From Takakia lepidozioides (taxonomy: Eukaryota; Plantae; Bryophyta), in assembly GCA_030704615.1 (NCBI GenBank), contig CM060734.1, positions 4,216,001-4,280,000 on the forward strand: a stretch of DNA of 64,000 nucleotides. Direction: 5' to 3'. The notes under the pieces were generated by a model. The model was not told where the DNA came from. It did not search any database and saw only the letters and a list, made by a program, of their open reading frames with translations. This document shows, piece after piece, positions 1 to 61,965 of this stretch. Position numbers and translations under genes: made by a program. The stretch's first letter is position 1; the number at the start of each line of letters is the position of its first letter.

Positions 1-507
1 CCCTACATTGCTTTGCCTGGCTACATCCCCACTTCTCCCAGGGCGCTTGCCCGGACGCTGAATCATCTGTGCGCATCTACCATGGCTGCAAACTCGAGCG
101 CTATAGTGTACTGACCTCCACACGAGCACAAAGCCACATTTCGGTGCAGAGGGGGAGTATGTCGGGTTGCCGAAAAATATCTATGCGTCCGATACCACCT
201 GAAACCGGGGTCAGTGTTCCTGGAGGAGGAAAGGAGGGATTCAAATGGAGTTATAGTCGAAAGTATTGTTGTGCTCCATGATGATTTCGGCGGCAGCAGG
301 GAATGGCGAGTTCCACCATCGGACAACGTCATATACAGGGCTGTTGGAGACTTCATTTTCCCGCCAAATGCGCCTTCTTGTCGCCCACCTTCCACGAAAG
401 AATCCGCGAATCTGAGAGTTGGAACCTCGAAGACATAATTCTGCAACGAAGATAATCCAAAGGCGACGCCATCACTGAAGGTGAGCAAGAACGCGGTTGT
501 TCACAAC

Positions 508-52385: not shown

Positions 52386-55300
52386 TCAAGCTTTCAAAAG
52401 AAAAGCTACGGTCGAAACCGGGCTACCTTCAGCACCTCCAAACTGAAAGGTAGGGTAGGTGCGGACATGGTCAATGTACTCAAAAGTTGGTCCTGTTGAA
52501 ATTGACAGACCATTAGGGTCCTCGTCTTCTTTCATGCCATGCCCATTGGTCTTCCATGAATGAGACAGAGTGTTCACTTCTGCTACTAGCTCATCCTTGG
52601 TGTGGTTACATGATGTGATCACCTGTCAGCATGTTCCCAGCCAATATATACACTCATGCATGTCAACAACAACCCAGGTTCCAAAATTGTTAGATAGGGA
52701 GACTGCCAACATGCGTGTGAGACAGACGTATGCTCGGCCATCACGTGGCTGCCATGGCTCTATGACTGTATATCCATGTGACATCAGTTGTCTTGGGTGG
52801 GTGACAAACACGGGTGGAGATGCCAGAGCCCTTCCATTGCCACGAGCAATTTGATAGGATGAATACTGAACTAGCTGGGGTGCATGACTGTAACATTGGG
52901 TAGCCAAATCAGGGGTCAATGGCACCAAGCCTACTAGCAAAGTCTGATATAGAGAATCAGAGAATCTCGCTCTATCCCCAAGACTGGCTCTATGAAGGCT
53001 CAAGTTATGGAAGATCAACAAACACCTCTCCTGCAATCCCTCTATAGGTGTAAAAAGCAAAAGGCCGTACCAGAACACCACCAGGAGCAATGAGTTTACA
53101 AATAGCCTTCCAATACAAAGCTCTGCATACACCCACCACGGGTCATTATACATGGTTACGTATGGGATAATGGCACACCTACCTCAGCTTAGAAATAGTG
53201 CAAGTCACAGATTTGAGGGGTCCAGACCCTTAGTAAGATACCTTCCAGTAACCCTTGTCAAATCTGAAGTTTTACTGTCACCGCTGTGCACCAAAGAGAG
53301 ATTACGAAGCCACTTAGTGCGTGCTTAGCATATAGTCTTGCCATGCTCATTTGCTGTTACTGTGGAAAGAGCGATAATGAGAACGTGTGGAACAAACCTG
53401 TGTGCTGGACCATCAGGGTGCAGGCCAATGGCATCAAGAGTGCCCTTGTCAGTGACTAACTTGAACTGTCGGTCCAGCTTGGTGTCCAGCACATCATCAA
53501 CCTGCAGACACAAACTCCTTGAAGTTGCAAATATGCATACCATGATGTTTATGTTCAAAGTTCATAGGAGAAAACGAGAAATTTGAACTTGTTCTTTTAA
53601 CCAAATTTGTCTGGGAGATGCCCTGACAAAAGTAACAAGGTTTCCATCTATCTGTCTCCTCCCTCAAGTGAAGGTCACTAATAAACAATGCTAACAACAA
53701 CTTACTTCTCCTGGCCTTCAGTAAGTTGCCAATTAGTAGACCAAGCAGCAGGTGGACACAAACAAGGACAACGTCAAACAGAAAGGTCAATCGGGGAATA
53801 TACCATGAAGGAGAAATTGCCCACGTTACTGCGCTCTGCCACAGCTTGTGCAAGCTCCACTGCCCCCTCACTGTAGTCTGTTCCTGTCAGGTCTGTGAAT
53901 CTGTTCCAGGAAACCATGAAATGTCATGCGTGCTGGCTTTTAGCATGACAAGACTTTCCAAAAGCTTCCTGACTACTCCAGATTTCAGCCTTCTCTAGCT
54001 TCTGCACTTTTTGTTACATTATGACCGTGATTAACTGCATAATGCAAGTTCACAAAGCAGAACTAAAGTCATGCTTGATTCCCACCAGCACTTGTCCAGT
54101 ACTTGGATATGACCTGGTCAGTCGGGGTTACTAAGAGTTGAATGATCCTACATGACTCCAAGCAGTGACCTTAGTTCAAAGGAAATGGGGACACAAACAC
54201 AACCTACAGTTAAAAACTAAGGGATTGGGCATTTAGCATAACACGACTTTCCAGCAGAACGAACTGCTTCCTGTAACTAGTCAAGATGTCAGACTTCTCT
54301 AGCCTACGAACTTTTTTTTACATTATGACTGTGATTTACTGCATAATGTCAGTTCATAAAGCAGGATTGAACCTGCTTCATTCCCATTGTCGCTCGTCCA
54401 GTCCTTGGATATGACATGGTCAGTTGTGGTTGCTAAGAATGCTTAATCCAACATGACTCCAAGCAGTGACTTTAGTCAAAGAAAATACAACCTACAGTTC
54501 AAAACTTGATGTGGCTTATGGATTGGGTTGATATCATCCCAATCCTACTCTGCACATTACCGGTGCCACGAAAGGCACAAGGATTCTTGCTGAAAAGACA
54601 TACCCTTGCTTGCGCAAAGCATGAAGGAAGACGCCATTGCCAGTGCCAAGGTCAAGAACGTTCCAATTGGCTAGCTCAAATGCCATGGATCCACTGGCTG
54701 AAAAATCTGACAGCCTGCATGGCACCAATGTAAAAACATTGACAGAATCAAAGGGAAGGCCTGAAGCCACAGTGAAACAAATTCTTGCCGTCCATGTTGC
54801 CACTGTCTCCATCACTTCTTCCCCAAACCTGAAAATCACATCCATTGTTGTTATGTCACCTGGGATGGTGGAATTCAAATGGATCTAAAACAAGAAATGG
54901 AACATGCTAGACGAATTGCCTATACACGACACGTAAGAGGTGGCATGCACAAGAGCAGTTAAGATCAAGACTGTTCCATAGAACAATACAAATACAAATA
55001 TCTGAAGATGTTACAATGAAACTGCTTCTGGTTTTCATGCCAACAAATCGGAAATGCTGGGTAAAATTTCTTACCAGATTTCCCCGGCATCACCATGCTC
55101 ATGGAAATTCACCAGCTCCTCTGCATAAGTTGAGTCCCAATGTGACTGGAGGCCCAGCATGGGCAGTTCCACCTCGGCATCTTGTTCTTCTTTGTCTGAA
55201 CTGCAAACCAATTAAACTGTTAGCTTCCCATTTCGATCACTGCGGAAATGGTGCAGACTCCCATTCAACTTACTCCTGGAAGACTAGTTTCAACGTTTAG

Positions 55301-55995
55301 ATGTAGTACAACCACCAACTGCTGCTCATCATAATTCAACTACCAACTGTTGTTGGATTTTCCTAACACACAGACACAAAGCATGTATCAATCTAGACAT
55401 GCGGAGTTGACACCAACAGTACAATAAAGTTCACCATTAACTCAACACTGCAGGTCTCCTGATGAATCTGAGGTTGACAACTGCTACTTTGAGGCTGATC
55501 GCACGTTGCATCCAGAGGACGGCAGTCCCGGAGGAAGAGGACGACAGAGGACGAAGTAAAGAGGAATTTATGTGCCTACAGAGTGTCTTTTCAAGCTCTC
55601 TCTTATTGGTGGTCTGAACTTGCACAGTATCAAAATGTACTGGACTGGTTTCCATAACTACTGGTGCAACTAGCTCAGAGGTCTCCTCACTCAACATAGT
55701 GTATATGGCAATGCCAAAAGCATGTTAGAGGATCAAACGACTGGGAGTAGCCATCATACAGATAATCTGATGGACGTAAAGTGGCTGCCATTACGTCAAC
55801 CGCATCTGCATTCCTTTGATCTTCACCATCAAGTGTGCTCCCGTATTCACTCTTCACAGACCACGAATCCGCAGCCACTGATCGCTCATCGTCAGAGTAA
55901 TGCGTGCCTACGTCAATATCCGCCTGACGACTACCCTCCCCGCGCCCGGAGTGCGATTGTTCGCCTTCTTCTGGCGGCCACCGAATGCCCGCCAT
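52386..55995 (-). CDS. EEF1AKMT2: EEF1A lysine methyltransferase 2 (METTL10/EFM4-like). Exons 55995-55760, 55200-55075, 54828-54604, 53900-53804, 53501-53398, 53122-53071, 52622-52386
   Basis: All introns GT-AG and phase-consistent; SDDERSVAADSWSVKSEYGSTLD, HGDAGEIWFG, VLDLGTGNG, DKGTLDAIGLHPDG, ITSCNHTKDEL, YPTFQFGG. Confidence 0.95.
53945..54540. repeat. ~300 bp diverged tandem duplication in intron 3
   Basis: Shared blocks TTACATTATGAC, CTTGGATATGAC.TGGTCAGT, ACATGACTCCAAGCAGTGAC, CAACCTACAGTT. Confidence 0.85.
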
Positions 55996-56385
55996 GCCCG
56001 TCACCGTGCCAATTTCAATCCCTATCCTTCCAATTCAAGTCTCAGTCTCTTCTACTCTGGTGCCCCTTCAGCCCTAATCTACAAATACTCGATCAAACCA
56101 CGATGCCCCTGGTTATGGCTGTCTCTCCTCTTCAAACTTCAACCTTCACAACTACACAATTCCCCCGAACCGAGACAGTTTCGGCACCGGCTCGGTGTAA
56201 TCCCGTTCTCTTAGTGGGAACAATCTATGCTAGGGTGCTCTGCTTGTTGGGAACTTCGTCTTTCTTTCCCATCGTCTCGCAGCAAAGACAGTTTGTTTCT
56301 ATATAGCCTAATCCGAACAGCCTTCTCATGGTCTATCGCATACACAAACGAAGTCCTATTCGAGACTGCCTTAGCTTAGCAGCGC
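55996..56385. promoter_or_regulatory. Bidirectional promoter region (390 bp between start codons)
   Basis: Divergent ATGs at 55995(-) and 56386(+); TATATA at ~56299. Confidence 0.75.
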
Positions 56386-59300
56386 ATGGAAGCCCTAATA
56401 TCTGCGTATATCTCAGTGTCTCATTCGAGCGATGGAGACAAGGAAGATGATGACACAGCAGAGGTTACCAAGCGGCGCAGGCTGATAGGCCCTCTTCCTG
56501 CTTCGCCTCTTCGTCAAAGGCCTCTTCTGTCTGTAATCACTGAGAAGCCCTCTCCACAGGACCCGCCGCACCTCTATCCTGAAGGTCTGTGTCCAAATTT
56601 CAAAGACTGCGGTTTAGCTGTGTAGTTTAGGTGGAAGGTTCATACTGAGAAGTATAAAGATCGTGCTACAGTCTGGGAGGGGTGGAAGGTCTTGTGGAAC
56701 ATGCTGAAGGATAATTACAAAAATATGTATATCAGTACGAAGTGCTTTTGACACTGCGTGTCAGATATGTTGATTAGGAATCCAATTTAGCCTTCGTTAA
56801 GTAGTTGGGGACAGCATAGAATAACTCCAAAGTTGTCTACCAACATTGGGTACCAACCCTATCACCTTCTATGTAGTGCTGCAAAACAAAGACTGTAAAG
56901 TTCTTGACCTTACGAGGTTAACTGAAGACCATACATAACTAAGAGCAAACACATTCTGGACTGTTCCCTAAACACCTTTTGATGGTCAAGGTCTGCTCAT
57001 CACATCACTCTCTCTTTGTTGCAACGCTGAAAAACTACATGTCGTTCATCCTCATTCGAGACTTCTGCACCTGTTACAACACGCTCTTTGCACCATTTCT
57101 GTCTACCCTTAAAGATAAAATGTCACAGGATGGTATGATACTAGTAGTGCTTGCTCTAAGACCAACTCTAGAGCATAGTGGCACAGCGCGATACTTTCTA
57201 CGGCACCTTCTCGAAGTAGTTTGAATAACTTTTTTTTGCTCATCACTTAACTAATGATATCACACCCTTTTTTTCGTGCATCGATTGGTTCTCATGCATG
57301 GACCTAGAGAACGATTTAAAGAGCGCATTCCCTAGATGACGGTCTTAGAGGTCCTCACAGTCGTAGGGCAGGATACCTTATTATCAAATCGCACCTTGTC
57401 TTATGTGGAAATACGTAAATGGAAGGCCATATTAATTGCTAACGAGGGTGGTTGCCTCATATCTCTACAGCATCTCTCTGATTTACAGTACTGGATTAAA
57501 CTGCAATTTCTAGTATGTGTCAATGCCAGCTTCTAAATGCATGGTCAATTTCATGTAAAGGATTATCATCGACTGTGCGCCATGAAATCAGAGTACCGAC
57601 TCCCCGAGTTTATCATCCTGTGAGGACTACAGCCTCATATGTACCTCATGGTCAACTGAACAGGAACGGTCAAAGAGGCATTGTTTCATGCTAAAATTGT
57701 CAGACATTGAGTCATGCAGTCATGGGTAAAGCAATTATCCCTTTGCCTGGCAGTATTTCTGTCTATGAGATGTGTTCTGTCTGTTGTATTAGCACGGGTG
57801 GGAGGCAGATATGTGTCAAAGAGAGAGCGCGTGGCAATGGCTGTCTCTGTCACAACCTGGACACCCTCTCCCCCGGTCCATCGGCCACCTGGTTGTCTCT
57901 TGCTTCCATTGCGCTAACCCTTGCAAACCACTTCTATTATGAGGGACTTTGCTGGCAGAAAGTGAGGAGACATCTATGAAGACTACTTGAGGATGTCACA
58001 TGTTGCAGCTTCACTACCTTCTCTATGGCCATCTCTGATTTTGTTATTCCAGGCAGACACATGGGCATGGGCATGTAACTAAGAGATAGAGAGATGACGC
58101 CAGCGTAAATGAGAGCCTCTTCCCCTTGTTGGGTACTAACCCCCTTTCAGGAGTGGGCTCTATGAAGTGGGTCTAACTATACTACAACTAGTCCATTTAC
58201 AGTTTTTTGCTTGTTAAGGACAAGTGCTGTAAGAGATCTAATTGCCATAACATGTAGAGAACGGGCATGTAACTATGATTATCCTAGCAAAGTCTTGAAG
58301 AAAGTCTCTGGTTGCAAATGACTAAAAGATAAAGCTGGCCTCTGGAAGAGTAACTCAAGATTGTCCTCCTTTGTTTAAGAAATATACTTGGTTCTTTCAT
58401 TGGTGGTGTATTTTGGATTTCAAAAGGTGCTTTAGAGACTACCAGACATTGAACGATGACATACTTGCATAATTCAAAGCAAGCTTTTGACAGATAATCT
58501 GTTCTGTAGAAGGTTGGAGTAGCTAGGGGAGGACATGGGGCCCTGGTCACAGTGTAAGGGGTTTGCATCTTGGAAAAGTACCACTAGCTCCACCTGGCAG
58601 TATTCTTTTTTGTCTTCTAGAGTTGAGGGATTTTCTGATGCAACTCAGCATCTCCCTTCAGATAGACGGGGAGCCACACCATCAGATGGGGACCAACGCA
58701 CGGTAGTGACAGCCTTGGTGTGACCGTTGAGCTGAGTGACCTGCCCCTTTGAGTGACAATTACGACATCCACAGCCCTCCCTGCGAATCTCTTGAGCATA
58801 GTCCAATCTTTTCTGAATGTGATGGGGTAGCTTCACATCAAACAGGCTCTCCAGCCCTGCTCATACCACCAGCAAAGAGAACCTTAGTCTGAACTTCAGC
58901 TTGACTTAAAAAACTTAATTCTACGTGAGAATCCTCTGTTTGGTCCCATGCCCCACCCAATACCTCCACTCATTACTCCATGTGCCAATCATCTCTAGGA
59001 CCAGCTAGAGTAACCTTCAACCTCATGCATGTCATGGGCTGTGGGAGTCATGTAGTTCCATGTTGAGAGTATCCCCAGGCGGCATAAATCCTGTGGCGCC
59101 TATGAATAACGGCAAAGCGTAACATTGTCTCTTGCCACAATGTAAGTCTATAAGCCTGCACAACCGCTGGTGAACAAAATAAATGTCCAGTTGAATTCAT
59201 TTTCATTATGCCATCAGAAGCGTCTAGTATGTGTTGGTTCTTGTCTTCTAAAACGAAGTCATTCTCCATTCCAAAAAGCTTCACCAGGCTCAACTATGCA

Positions 59301-61268
59301 CCACCAGTCCATTTTTGAGGTAGATGTTACAAAAGAATCTATTCACTGAAGGCCCACCGGGCCCAAGGGAGAGAGAGAAGGAGAGTTTGTTTGATTAAAG
59401 ATATGTTTAATGAATCCAAGAGATATGCCTTCTAACAACGAGCTGTAAAACCCTTCGTTTGCACAGGTGCCCTGCTTGCATCGGGGGGGATGGATCAGAG
59501 AGCGTACATTTGGAATGTGTGGAATGCACCAGGCCACCAGATTGCACAGATGCTCTCTTGCCACACGGCAGCTCTTAAAGATATCCAGTGGTCGATAGAT
59601 GGGAGCTCTTTGCTCAGCTGTGGATTTGACAAGACAGCCAGACTAAGTGACATCGAATCAGGTTCCCAGATACAAGTTAGTGATTTTGTTCTCCATGATA
59701 GTATTTGCAGTTTTGATGCCGCAACTGGAACTTGAACCATATTGTATCAGAGACACCGAAAAGAATCTGAGGATCACTCGCGTAAGTATTCTTGTTTGAG
59801 ATGGATAAACGTAGCAGTTCACAGGCCATTGAGCCACTGTCCCCTCAGCATGCAATACAGATGCCTCCCTCACAATCCTTGTACGGAATTGACATGGTTC
59901 TTGTACAGGAATTTGGAGAATGAGCTTTACTTAGTGATCCCAAACACACATGATACTGGTTGGTGAGTGGAGTTGCACACCGCTCCCTCAGGACATTGGC
60001 TAAGGCATGATCTTGAGAATATAGTTTCTGCTTGATACTAATCCCCATGCAGGCGCTCGTGACCTTTAACCCAAAAGGGTGTGCAGGATTCATGGACCAC
60101 TATTTGGCTATGTAGTGTAGATTAAGTGGCTAGAAACCATAGTGGAAAGCATAATGTGTATAGCAGTGCTGCTACTGTAGCCATGCACATGAAGACATGT
60201 TACTTGTAGTTGTTGTTTTGCCAGTCTAACTGTCGAGATCAAGGGGGGAGGGTAAATATGAGACACATGTTTCATACTCTCCCTTTGTATAGTAGCGAAG
60301 TTTTGAGTCACAAGAGGAAATGAGGAAGTCTAGTCATTATTGATGCTTTTATTCATTCACTGTGGGACTGGGGTTGTGGAATAGATGTTTACAGAGAACC
60401 AATTTGTCAATGTGGTGAGGTTCCACCCTTCAGAACAGGAGCTCTTTCTATCAGGAGGCTCAAAAGGTGCCATTAGGCTGTGGGACTTGCGCACGGGAAA
60501 ATCAATACGGGAGTATACCAAAGGCCTAGGTCAAGTCATGGACTTGGACTTCAGCCCGGATGGAAAGCGGTTTGTCTCTACATCTGATATTGCAAAACGC
60601 AATGCAAGTGACAAAGCAATTGTTGTCTGGAATTTTGAGACACAAATCCCACTGTCCAATCAAGTAGGTCTCCACTCTTCAAACTATGCTTCATCTTTTG
60701 ATATTATCACATGGAGTAATTCATCATGATGCATCAAGGACAACTGAAGCCGAGATAATCTTGAATGAAAACTAGCTGTCTGAAATCCCATGAGCAGACT
60801 GGTTTGATGAATTCCTTCAACCGATATGCTATATTTGTGTGCCATCAATGTTCTGGAAGTCCAATTGTATCTCATCATTGGTCTGCTGGCCCACAGGTAT
60901 ATCTGGAGGCCTATACATGTCCGAGTGTGCGATTCCACCCGTATGAGGAGACATTTGTAGCCCAATCAAATGCCAACTACATTGCCATTTTCTCGGGGCG
61001 CCCCCCCTTCAAGCTGAACAGATACAAGCGGTTTGAAGGGCATCAGGTTGCTGGCTACCGTATTCAGTGCAATTTCAGCCCCGATGGTGAATGCATTGTT
61101 ACAGGCTCTACTGATGGGTGCATTTATTTTTACAACTACCGGTCATCGAAGCTCTTAACAAAGCTTCAGGCTCACAATGGTGTTTGCAGCGATGTTGTCT
61201 ATCATCCGGTTTTGCCATCTGTGGTCGCATCTTGTGGATGGGATGGTGTTGTAACAGTATATGAATGA
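56386..61268 (+). CDS. WDR25: WD40-repeat protein WDR25-like. Plus-strand exons 56386-56584, 57793-57891, 59467-59675, 60385-60663, 60897-61268; exon 3 is on the minus strand
   Basis: GRYVSKRER, LLASGGMD..IWNVW, IVVWNFETQIPLSNQVYLEAYTCP..FHP..FVAQSNANYIAIFS, FEGHQVAGY, VASCGWDG; canonical splice sites. Confidence 0.9.
58680..58856 (-). other. WDR25: WDR25 exon 3 in inverted orientation (177 bp, phase 1-1, open)
   Basis: GAGCAG|GG..LESLFDVKLPHHIQKRL...QLNGHTKAVTTVRWSPSD G|GTGTGG; supplies the missing GH start of WD repeat 1 and joins exon 2 to GALLASGGMD in frame. Confidence 0.9.
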
Positions 61269-61965
61269 CATGCTACCTCAAAAGCCTCACATCGACAAAT
61301 AAAGTAGCAGATGAACTGCATTATGTTAAGTAAAAAATTGGAAATCAGCTGTCATGATCATACAGCAACAAACATGGAAATTTATCCAGTGTCCCTTATG
61401 CTACACCAAAGAGAATACGTTCTCAATCTTGCCAGTGCGGTTTAGGGAGAGGTCCACCACCTTCCCAACAGGTACTACATCTGCTCTGCAGAGTTCCGAC
61501 ACCATGTAAAGAAAGTCATAAATAATTAATCCTATCCCTTGTACAATTTCAAAGAACAGTTTGTCCTGCAAAATAAAGTGCAATCTAAAAGCCTCTAAAC
61601 TTTGTAATCACCTACTTCTGTGGATCATTCCATAACTACACTCAAGGACCACAGAAGACCACTTCAAGATCAGAAAATGGTCTTATTGGGCAATATTTAT
61701 AGCTTACAAGTGTCAATACCTCCATCCAATCTCCACAACATTCAAAATCTATCTTTGTCGCTGCATTGTTCATGTGCTTGAGTCCACAGTGGAGAAATTG
61801 GTGCCAGTTGCCACATCCGTGCTCATTTCATGCAATCCATGTGTGCGAAGGTTGATATTTGCAGGTAAAAGTAAAAAAGTTTGTTTAACGTCCAGTGAAT
61901 TTACAGAGCCTACTGCTCAACACACAGCCCATGGAGGGGCCAGTGGACGGTTGAAGGCACATGTT

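What the first reader, a model, noticed from the sequence alone, without database searches (positions are those of the whole stretch)
58680..58856. An intact exon of WDR25 sits on the opposite strand of its own gene
Seen in the sequence: all other exons are on plus, but the 59-codon exon ending LNGHTKAVTTVRWSPSD is on minus, in the correct positional order (between exons 2 and 4). It has CAG acceptor, GT donor, phase 1-1 and no stops, and the rest of the gene shows no decay. Established: this segment carries the GH start of a WD40 repeat. Inference: either a recent intragenic inversion (cis-splicing would skip the exon in frame and give an incomplete propeller), opposite-strand trans-splicing of the mod(mdg4) kind, a switchable DNA segment, or an assembly error. 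Only a weak ~30 bp inverted similarity (58512-58542 vs 58942-58971) was found as a possible breakpoint pair.
Basis: partly seen in the sequence, partly recalled or inferred. Interest (0 to 1): 0.85.

Follow-up and report, generated by a model that had tools for sequence, protein, structure and literature searches.

The report
Flipped exon in a moss WDR25 gene
One intact exon of a bryophyte's WDR25 gene (a suspected minor-spliceosome factor) really does lie backwards inside its own gene, most likely through a small DNA inversion, and the limited RNA data give no sign that the exon is rescued by trans-splicing.

Summary
A six-exon WDR25 orthologue lies on the + strand (56386-61268), but coding exon 3 (58856..58680) is on the minus strand. 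It sits in the right order, with an AG acceptor, a GT donor, phase 1-1, no stop codon and every strongly conserved residue kept. Land-plant orthologues align to it only on the minus strand.

It is not an assembly artefact. There are no N gaps. A contig built independently from the source sample's reads covers 58098-61500 without a difference at single-copy depth, joining minus-strand exon 3 to plus-strand exons 4-6 without a branch. The organism is a bryophyte, probably a moss. Ceratodon purpureus and a closer relative have all exons on one strand, so the inversion is lineage-specific.

RNA contigs show exons 4-6 spliced. Exon 3 is covered only by one low-depth contig that runs unspliced through its acceptor. 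No strand-changing joints were seen.

Best reading: a real break-and-rejoin inversion between introns 2 and 3. Cis-splicing would then skip exon 3 in frame and remove two beta-strands of the propeller. Trans-splicing, a DNA switch and an undetected second copy are not excluded but have no support. First readers flagged many other small inversions in this genome. I did not check those.

The parts
56386..56584 (+). WDR25 coding exon 1 (starts MEALISAY..., ends in phase 1)
   Evidence: ORF and donor G|gtctgt. N-terminal M-[DE]-A-L-x-x-A-Y motif shared with the orthologues.
57793..57891 (+). Coding exon 2 (..GGRYVSKRER..HRPPG, phase 1-1)
   Evidence: Acceptor tattag|CA and donor CTG|gttgtc. The GRYVSKRER motif has invariant residues in the orthologue alignment.
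57892..58679 (.). Interval that must hold the left inversion breakpoint (position not resolved)
   Evidence: It lies between the exon 2 donor and the exon 3 donor. No inverted repeat or intron homology marks the break.
58096..58127 (.). Core of a dispersed repeat in intron 2; the DNA contigs break here
   Evidence: The depth bin 57970-58146 that contains it reads 185 against about 27 beside it. Contigs from X1, X5 and X6 leave the window sequence at both edges.
58680..58856 (-). Coding exon 3, inverted (LESLFDVKLPHH...LNGHTKAVTTVRWSPSD)
   Evidence: Open frame, AG/GT borders, phase 1-1. The four residues conserved at 90% or more in 110 orthologues are all kept.
58857..59466 (.). Interval that must hold the right inversion breakpoint (position not resolved)
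   Evidence: It lies between the exon 3 acceptor and the exon 4 acceptor. It is wholly inside read-derived contig 8 of run X1 (58098-61500, 0 differences).
59467..59675 (+). Coding exon 4 (G-ALLASGGMDQRAYIWNVW...)
   Evidence: Acceptor cacag|GT. Donor confirmed by the RNA joint 59675>60385. RNA contig 12 of X5 starts at 59466.
60385..60663 (+). Coding exon 5
   Evidence: RNA joints 59675>60385 and 60663>60897, both GT..AG. tblastn.
60897..61268 (+). Coding exon 6 with the stop codon
   Evidence: RNA joint 60663>60897 in X5 and X6. 76-85% identity to moss orthologues.

Best explanation
A real, lineage-specific DNA inversion turned coding exon 3 of this bryophyte's WDR25 gene onto the opposite strand. 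It spans at least the 177-bp exon and at most about 1.57 kb, with one break in intron 2 and one in intron 3. No repeats flank it, so the likely origin is two double-strand breaks rejoined end to end; this is inferred. The plus-strand pre-mRNA now carries the exon as antisense intron sequence, so cis-splicing cannot include it. The expected product joins exon 2 to exon 4. That junction is in frame (phase 1 to phase 1) and removes 59 residues: a helix and two high-confidence beta-strands at the start of the WD40 propeller. The allele is therefore probably weakened or null for the full-length protein, while exons 4-6 are still transcribed and spliced. Because the exon, its splice sites and its conserved residues show no damage, the event is probably recent. 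Shown here: the exon's orientation, its intactness, read support for the arrangement, the normal orientation in other bryophytes, and splicing of exons 4-6. Inferred: how the breaks arose, the skipped mRNA, the effect on the protein and the age.
For: Geometry and intactness. Read support: Logan contig 8 of DNA run X1 (3808 nt, depth 27) covers 58098-61500 with 0 differences and no branch. Contig 7 covers 57320-58125 including exon 2. Depth is uniform at 27-29, as for single-copy DNA. No N gaps. Normal arrangement elsewhere: Ceratodon purpureus has the same six exons and phases, all on one strand. RNA contigs of the closest relative carry exon 2, a retained intron 2, exon 3 and exon 4 colinearly. 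Two further moss fragments join exons 2-3-4 normally. No flanking inverted repeats. The skip is in frame and occurs naturally: Diphasiastrum complanatum has annotated isoforms with and without the same exon, with the same borders. The AlphaFold2 model of the Ceratodon orthologue places helix 91-102 and strands 114-119 and 125-130 (block pLDDT 95-98) inside exon 3. RNA: joints 59675>60385 and 60663>60897 are confirmed. The X5 contig on exon 3 (58753-59021, depth 4.8) runs unspliced through the acceptor, at about the same depth as an intron-4 contig (3.4) and well below exons 4-6 (13.5).
Against: All DNA evidence comes from the one sample that was probably the source of the assembly; no independent individual was tested. 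The breakpoints are not located. The exon 2 to exon 4 junction was not observed: exon 2 has no RNA contig at all, and holes occur even inside well-covered exons, so the mRNA form is unknown. The exon is perfectly preserved, which also fits continued use. Exon 3 shows no clear excess of lineage-specific changes (counts are small).
Confidence: 0.68

Rival explanations
1. The inverted exon is still used. The minus strand is transcribed across exon 3, and two trans-splicing events (exon 2 to exon 3, exon 3 to exon 4) rebuild the full mRNA, as in C. elegans eri-6/7 or Drosophila mod(mdg4).
For: The exon, both splice sites and all strongly conserved residues are intact. An RNA contig does cover part of the exon and 165 nt upstream of it on the minus strand. 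X5 contig 12 begins exactly at 59466, which fits a graph branch at the exon 4 acceptor with an upstream partner ending in G. Exon 3 and exon 2 both end in G (inference).
Against: No strand-changing joint is listed in either RNA run. The only exon-3 contig passes through the acceptor unspliced, at intron-background depth rather than exon depth. 58680-58752 has no RNA cover. There are no flanking repeats or complementary intron stretches of the kind that bring eri-6/7 transcripts together (PMC11414722). An internal exon would need two trans events, and I know of no precedent for that.
Confidence: 0.08
2. This locus is a damaged duplicate, and a second intact WDR25 copy elsewhere in the genome does the work.
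For: It would explain how a haploid plant tolerates the lesion. Only this 64-kb window could be searched directly.
Against: DNA depth over exons 3-6 stays at 27, the single-copy level, at a threshold of 90% likeness, so there is no close second copy in the reads. The RNA contigs for exons 4-6 match this locus with 0 differences. No second copy in the window.
Confidence: 0.08
3. Assembly artefact: the segment was placed backwards by the assembler or scaffolder.
For: Small mis-orientations do occur in assemblies. Contigs 7 and 8 of run X1 meet only through a roughly 30-nt repeat at 58096-58127, so that one adjacency is not proven by the k-mer contigs.
Against: There are no N gaps. A de Bruijn contig built from reads alone carries exon 3 (minus) and exons 4-6 (plus) on one unbranched path, with 0 differences and at full depth. 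The opposite orientation of exon 3 and exon 4 holds whatever happens at the 58096-58127 repeat.
Confidence: 0.06
4. An old inversion whose exon has taken on another role, for example as part of a minus-strand transcript, or a programmed invertible segment.
For: The exon is preserved. RNA covers 58753-59021. First readers noted many other inversions in this genome.
Against: An in-frame TGA lies 6 nt upstream of the acceptor and the exon frame has no ATG. No Rfam match. No inverted repeats. No heterogeneity in the DNA contigs.
Confidence: 0.05

Closest known systems
C. elegans eri-6/7 locus (inverted eri-6 rescued by trans-splicing; Zhang, Felix and Andersen 2024, PMC11414722)
   Same: Part of one gene lies on the opposite strand from the rest after an inversion, and the flipped exons stay intact.
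   Different: There, whole 5' exons are flipped, direct repeats derived from Polinton terminal repeats flank them and mediate trans-splicing, and the chimeric mRNA is documented. Here a single internal exon is flipped, no repeats flank it, and no chimeric junction was seen.
Drosophila mod(mdg4) trans-splicing of exons encoded on both strands (PMC13490949, PMC4387717)
   Same: Exons of one protein are encoded on opposite strands.
   Different: mod(mdg4) uses alternative 3' terminal exons with their own promoters and defined intronic trans-splicing motifs. Here the exon is internal and constitutive, and none of that was demonstrated.
Ordinary small intragenic inversions from double-strand break repair (structural variants)
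   Same: No flanking repeats, and a small segment between two introns is flipped with no other damage. First readers noted many similar events in this genome (unverified).
   Different: Nothing essential differs. The unusual points are that exactly one intact constitutive exon of a conserved single-copy gene is affected, and that the plant is probably haploid (my knowledge of moss biology, not tested).
WDR25, sister paralogue of PRP17/CDC40 (Vosseberg et al. 2023, PMC9887622; PDB 9xu3 chain W)
   Same: The Ceratodon orthologue, which is 73% identical to window exons 4-6, matches human WDR25 at E 2e-72 and PRP17 at about 1e-53. The window gene shares the N-terminal GRYVSKRER motif and a C-terminal WD40 propeller.
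   Different: In this genome the exon encoding the first two propeller strands is inverted.

Membership tests
WDR25 orthologue (PRP17/CDC40 sister family) | Best matches are WDR25 proteins over the whole WD40 body | tested here: met
   Window exons 4-6 are 73% identical to the Ceratodon orthologue and 55-69% identical to other land-plant proteins named WDR25. The Ceratodon orthologue matches PDB 9xu3_W, human WDR25, at E 2e-72, ahead of PRP17.
WDR25 orthologue (PRP17/CDC40 sister family) | Conserved N-terminal GRYVSKRER motif and the same six-exon structure with the same phases | tested here: met
   The motif is in exon 2. Ceratodon has the same six exons and phases.
Trans-spliced split gene (eri-6/7 or mod(mdg4) type) | Exons of one protein on opposite strands | tested here: met
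Trans-spliced split gene (eri-6/7 or mod(mdg4) type) | mRNA junctions that join exons from the two strands | tested here: inconclusive
   No strand-changing joint in two RNA runs. The exon-3 contig is unspliced at the acceptor. Only sparse assembled contigs were available, not raw reads.
Trans-spliced split gene (eri-6/7 or mod(mdg4) type) | Flanking repeats or complementary intron sequences that bring the two transcripts together | tested here: not met
   The best inverted match between the two gaps is at chance level (181 of 200 shuffles as good). No direct or inverted repeat family brackets the exon.
Trans-spliced split gene (eri-6/7 or mod(mdg4) type) | An independent promoter and transcript for the flipped exon | not testable with these tools
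   Contigs carry no strand information or transcript ends.
Programmed invertible DNA segment | Inverted repeats at the borders and both orientations present in the reads | tested here: not met
   No inverted repeats. One unbranched DNA contig at full depth. Minor variants could have been dropped by the contig builder.
Assembly mis-orientation | Gaps at the borders, or reads that contradict the assembly | tested here: not met
   No N runs. The read-derived contig agrees with the window over 58098-61500.

The most novel reading that the evidence does not exclude
The flipped internal exon is still built into WDR25 mRNA by bidirectional transcription and two trans-splicing events. That would be the first internal exon known to be restored this way, in a plant, and in a gene that is itself a suspected minor-spliceosome factor.
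Probability: 0.07. Interest if true: 0.85.

Novelty: new member of a known kind. Interest (0 to 1): 0.4.

Why it matters
It is a cleanly documented natural case in which a single constitutive exon of a conserved, apparently single-copy gene has been flipped in a plant that is probably haploid. WDR25 is the sister paralogue of PRP17 and is suspected to act in the minor (U12) spliceosome (PMC9887622, PMC11874965). If the allele is impaired, this species is a natural test of what WDR25 does; retention of U12 introns would be the readout. If the exon is still used, it would be a new kind of trans-splicing. It may also be one visible example of what could be a genome-wide excess of small inversions in this assembly, which first readers noted repeatedly and nobody has yet checked.

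Tried and rejected
- **Flanking inverted repeats.** None were found.
- **Breakpoints from intron homology.** Comparison with the closest relative's short exon 3 to exon 4 spacer was not significant (z 0.3 and 0.8).
- **Breakpoints from T/A strand skew.** This genome's introns have almost no skew (about 0.05), so the test is uninformative.
- **Relative-rate test for decay of exon 3.** With Ceratodon as outgroup the counts are 11 changes in the window lineage against 8 in the relative. With Marchantia as outgroup they are 9 for the window against 5 for Ceratodon, compared with 14 against 37 in exons 4-6. The numbers are small and the tree is uncertain, so I draw no firm conclusion.
- **Closer relatives or other samples.** The metagenome scan with the exon 3 peptide found nothing, and the scan with exon 4 found only distant, probably bacterial WD40 proteins. 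The protein search with exon 3 found nothing. The search with the Ceratodon exon-3 region found only two Ceratodon-like moss fragments. Exact look-ups of two window ORFs found nothing.
- **Rfam.** No match over 57800-59500.
- **Second copy in the window.** None.
  - The joined (spliced) protein model was never searched or folded; exons were searched singly by reference.
  - Junction probes for exon 2/3, 3/4 and 2/4 have no reference and were not sent to any collection.
It was redone from coordinates only.

Full report
**What is there**

The window carries a compact six-exon gene on the + strand. The coding exons are:

| Exon | Coordinates | Strand |
|---|---|---|
| 1 | 56386-56584 | + |
| 2 | 57793-57891 | + |
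| 3 | 58856..58680 | - |
| 4 | 59467-59675 | + |
| 5 | 60385-60663 | + |
| 6 | 60897-61268 | + |

Coding exon 3 is 177 nt and is flanked by ...tgagcag|GG and GATG|gtgtgg. It reads LESLFDVKLPHHIQKRLDYAQEIRREGCGCRNCHSKGQVTQLNGHTKAVTTVRWSPSD without a stop. It starts and ends in phase 1, which fits the phase-1 end of exon 2 (..CCT G) and the start of exon 4 (GT GCC ..). All other borders are GT..AG with consistent phases. The window has no N runs and no second copy of the segment.

**Identity of the gene and the organism**

- A search of 1.8 billion representative proteins with the last exon, followed by a search with the best hit, returned WDR25 orthologues of land plants.
- Window exons 4-6 are 81% identical to a set of RNA-derived proteins from an unnamed relative (P0001, P0151, P0263). 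They are 73% identical to Ceratodon purpureus KC19_10G166800, 69% to Marchantia paleacea and 66% to Diphasiastrum. The organism is therefore a bryophyte, most likely a moss.
- With tblastn, every land-plant orthologue tested that contains the segment, except the angiosperm-like P0051, places its exon-3 part on the minus strand at 58854..58675 and the rest on plus. For Ceratodon this is residues 81-136, E 1e-12.
- Against solved structures, the Ceratodon orthologue matches human WDR25 (9xu3 chain W, E 2e-72) ahead of PRP17/CDC40.
- WDR25 is described as the sister paralogue of CDC40, with a distribution typical of minor-spliceosome proteins (PMC9887622, PMC11874965).

**Is the inversion real?**

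Four DNA runs from one sample, probably the source of the assembly, hold the whole stretch.

- Laying run X1, a contig built from reads alone (3808 nt, depth 27) covers 58098-61500 with no difference and no gap. It carries exon 3 (minus) and exons 4-6 (plus) on one unbranched path.
- A second contig covers 57320-58125, which includes exon 2.
- These two contigs meet only in a roughly 30-nt dispersed repeat at 58096-58127. That is the one adjacency the k-mer contigs do not prove.
- Depth is a uniform 27-29.

Whatever happens at that repeat, exon 3 and exon 4 face opposite ways in the reads. An assembler or scaffolder error is therefore unlikely. The absence of a branch argues against a sizeable fraction of molecules in the other orientation, although the contig builder can drop rare variants. 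No independent individual could be tested. A plant metagenome (X7) holds identical 151-nt pieces of exon 4 and intron 4 only.

**State in relatives**

- Ceratodon has the same six exons with the same phases, all on one strand, and introns of about 100-380 nt.
- In the closest relative, one RNA contig retains intron 2 between exon 2 and exon 3 (L003). Another has that intron spliced out (L004). All three contigs carry exon 3 and exon 4 on the same strand.
- Two more moss fragments join exons 2-3-4 normally.
- The inversion is therefore specific to the lineage of the window.

**State of the exon**

- In an alignment of 110 orthologues, the exon-3 columns conserved at 90% or more are L, the H of GH, W and S. 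The window keeps all four.
- Two less conserved residues are changed: Pro in 68% of orthologues and His in 88%.
- Relative-rate counts are small and show no clear decay.
- The event is therefore either recent or the exon is still under selection. With no close relative available I cannot tell which.

**How it arose**

No direct or inverted repeat brackets the exon. Intron homology to the relative and strand skew did not locate the breaks. Two breaks rejoined in reverse is the simplest origin, and this is inference. First readers of this scan noted more than fifteen other small inversions in the same genome. I did not verify those notes. They suggest the event may be one of many.

**What the gene now makes**

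Two runs guessed to be RNA (X5 and X6, from other samples) were laid as assembled contigs.

- Exons 4-5-6 are joined at 59675>60385 and 60663>60897, both GT..AG, with 0 differences from the window. The 3' part of this locus is therefore expressed and spliced.
- X5 contig 12 starts exactly at 59466. That fits a graph branch at the exon 4 acceptor with an upstream partner ending in G. Exon 2 and exon 3 both end in TG, so this does not discriminate between them (inference).
- Exon 3 is touched by only one X5 contig (58753-59021, depth 4.8). It runs unspliced through the acceptor at 58856. Its depth resembles an intron-4 contig (3.4) rather than the exon contig (13.5).
- 58680-58752 has no RNA cover, and exon 2 has none in either run.
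- No strand-changing joint is listed.
- All laid records of X5 and X6 can be accounted for, so no junction contig is hidden. Holes occur even inside exon 6, so absence of cover proves little.

The data give no support to trans-splicing but cannot exclude it. The exon 2 to exon 4 skip is expected, not observed.

**Consequence**

The skip is in frame. The same exon, with the same borders, is present or absent in annotated isoforms of Diphasiastrum complanatum. An AlphaFold2 model of the Ceratodon orthologue (mean pLDDT 83) places a helix (residues 91-102) and two strands (114-119 and 125-130; block pLDDT 95-98) inside exon 3, directly before the first strand of exon 4. A protein without exon 3 would lack two propeller strands and is probably impaired. 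This is inference from general WD40 architecture.

**Verdict**

The rivals are trans-splicing (0.08), an unseen second copy (0.08), artefact (0.06) and other roles or a DNA switch (0.05). It is a new member of a known kind, a small intragenic inversion. The open and testable question is what mRNA it yields.

The joined spliced model and junction probes were not searched, because they have no reference. 

Noticed in passing
L001:176-246; L003 about 846-873; L004 about 2590-2645: In the closest relative, three RNA contigs from three samples keep a spacer of 71, 26 or 52 nt between exon 3 and exon 4. None has a usable AG at the ancestral acceptor (aat|GT instead of cag|GT), and in all three exon 3 is out of frame with exon 4. 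The called proteins therefore start at exon 4 or read exon 3 in the wrong frame. Two lineages thus show different lesions at the same exon 3 to exon 4 junction.
   Followed up: partly
window 55071-56983: A neighbouring gene lies head to head on the minus strand; its N-terminus looks like that of a METTL10/EFM4-type methyltransferase (..WDSTYAEELVNFHEHGDAGEIW, from memory, not tested). Abundant RNA contigs (depth 28-50) run colinearly from below 56200 to 56657 and 56983. They cover WDR25 exon 1 and pass its donor unspliced.
   Followed up: no
window 57970-58146 and 58952-59005: Pieces of dispersed repeats sit in the introns beside the flipped exon. The first bin has about 6-7 times single-copy DNA depth, and its 58096-58127 core occurs inside other transcripts. 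The second is a 54-nt match (2 differences) to an abundant transcript (depth 64). Neither was identified, and there is no Rfam match.
   Followed up: partly
window 56930: RNA contigs of both X5 and X6 carry an 11-nt insertion (ATTTGCAGCTT) that the window lacks. This is either a difference between strains or another copy of the repeat that fills 56731-57350.
   Followed up: no
P0166 versus P0006 and P0156 (Diphasiastrum complanatum O6H91_18G061000): Annotated isoforms with and without the exon-3 equivalent, with the same borders as in the window. In-frame skipping of this exon therefore occurs in a lycophyte.
   Followed up: partly
same genome, other pieces (notes s1-474536, s1-493614, s1-462592, s1-473920, s1-470404, s1-461797 and others): First readers flagged many small inversions (0.16-34 kb) that split genes or transposons and that restore the frames when flipped back. 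If they are real, this genome has an unusual load of small inversions.
   Followed up: no
PDB 9xu3 chain W: A solved structure that contains human WDR25 now exists. The chain letter W is also used for PRP17 in three of the spliceosome entries matched (8xi2, 8ro0, 9l5r). I could not read the entry's title.
   Followed up: no
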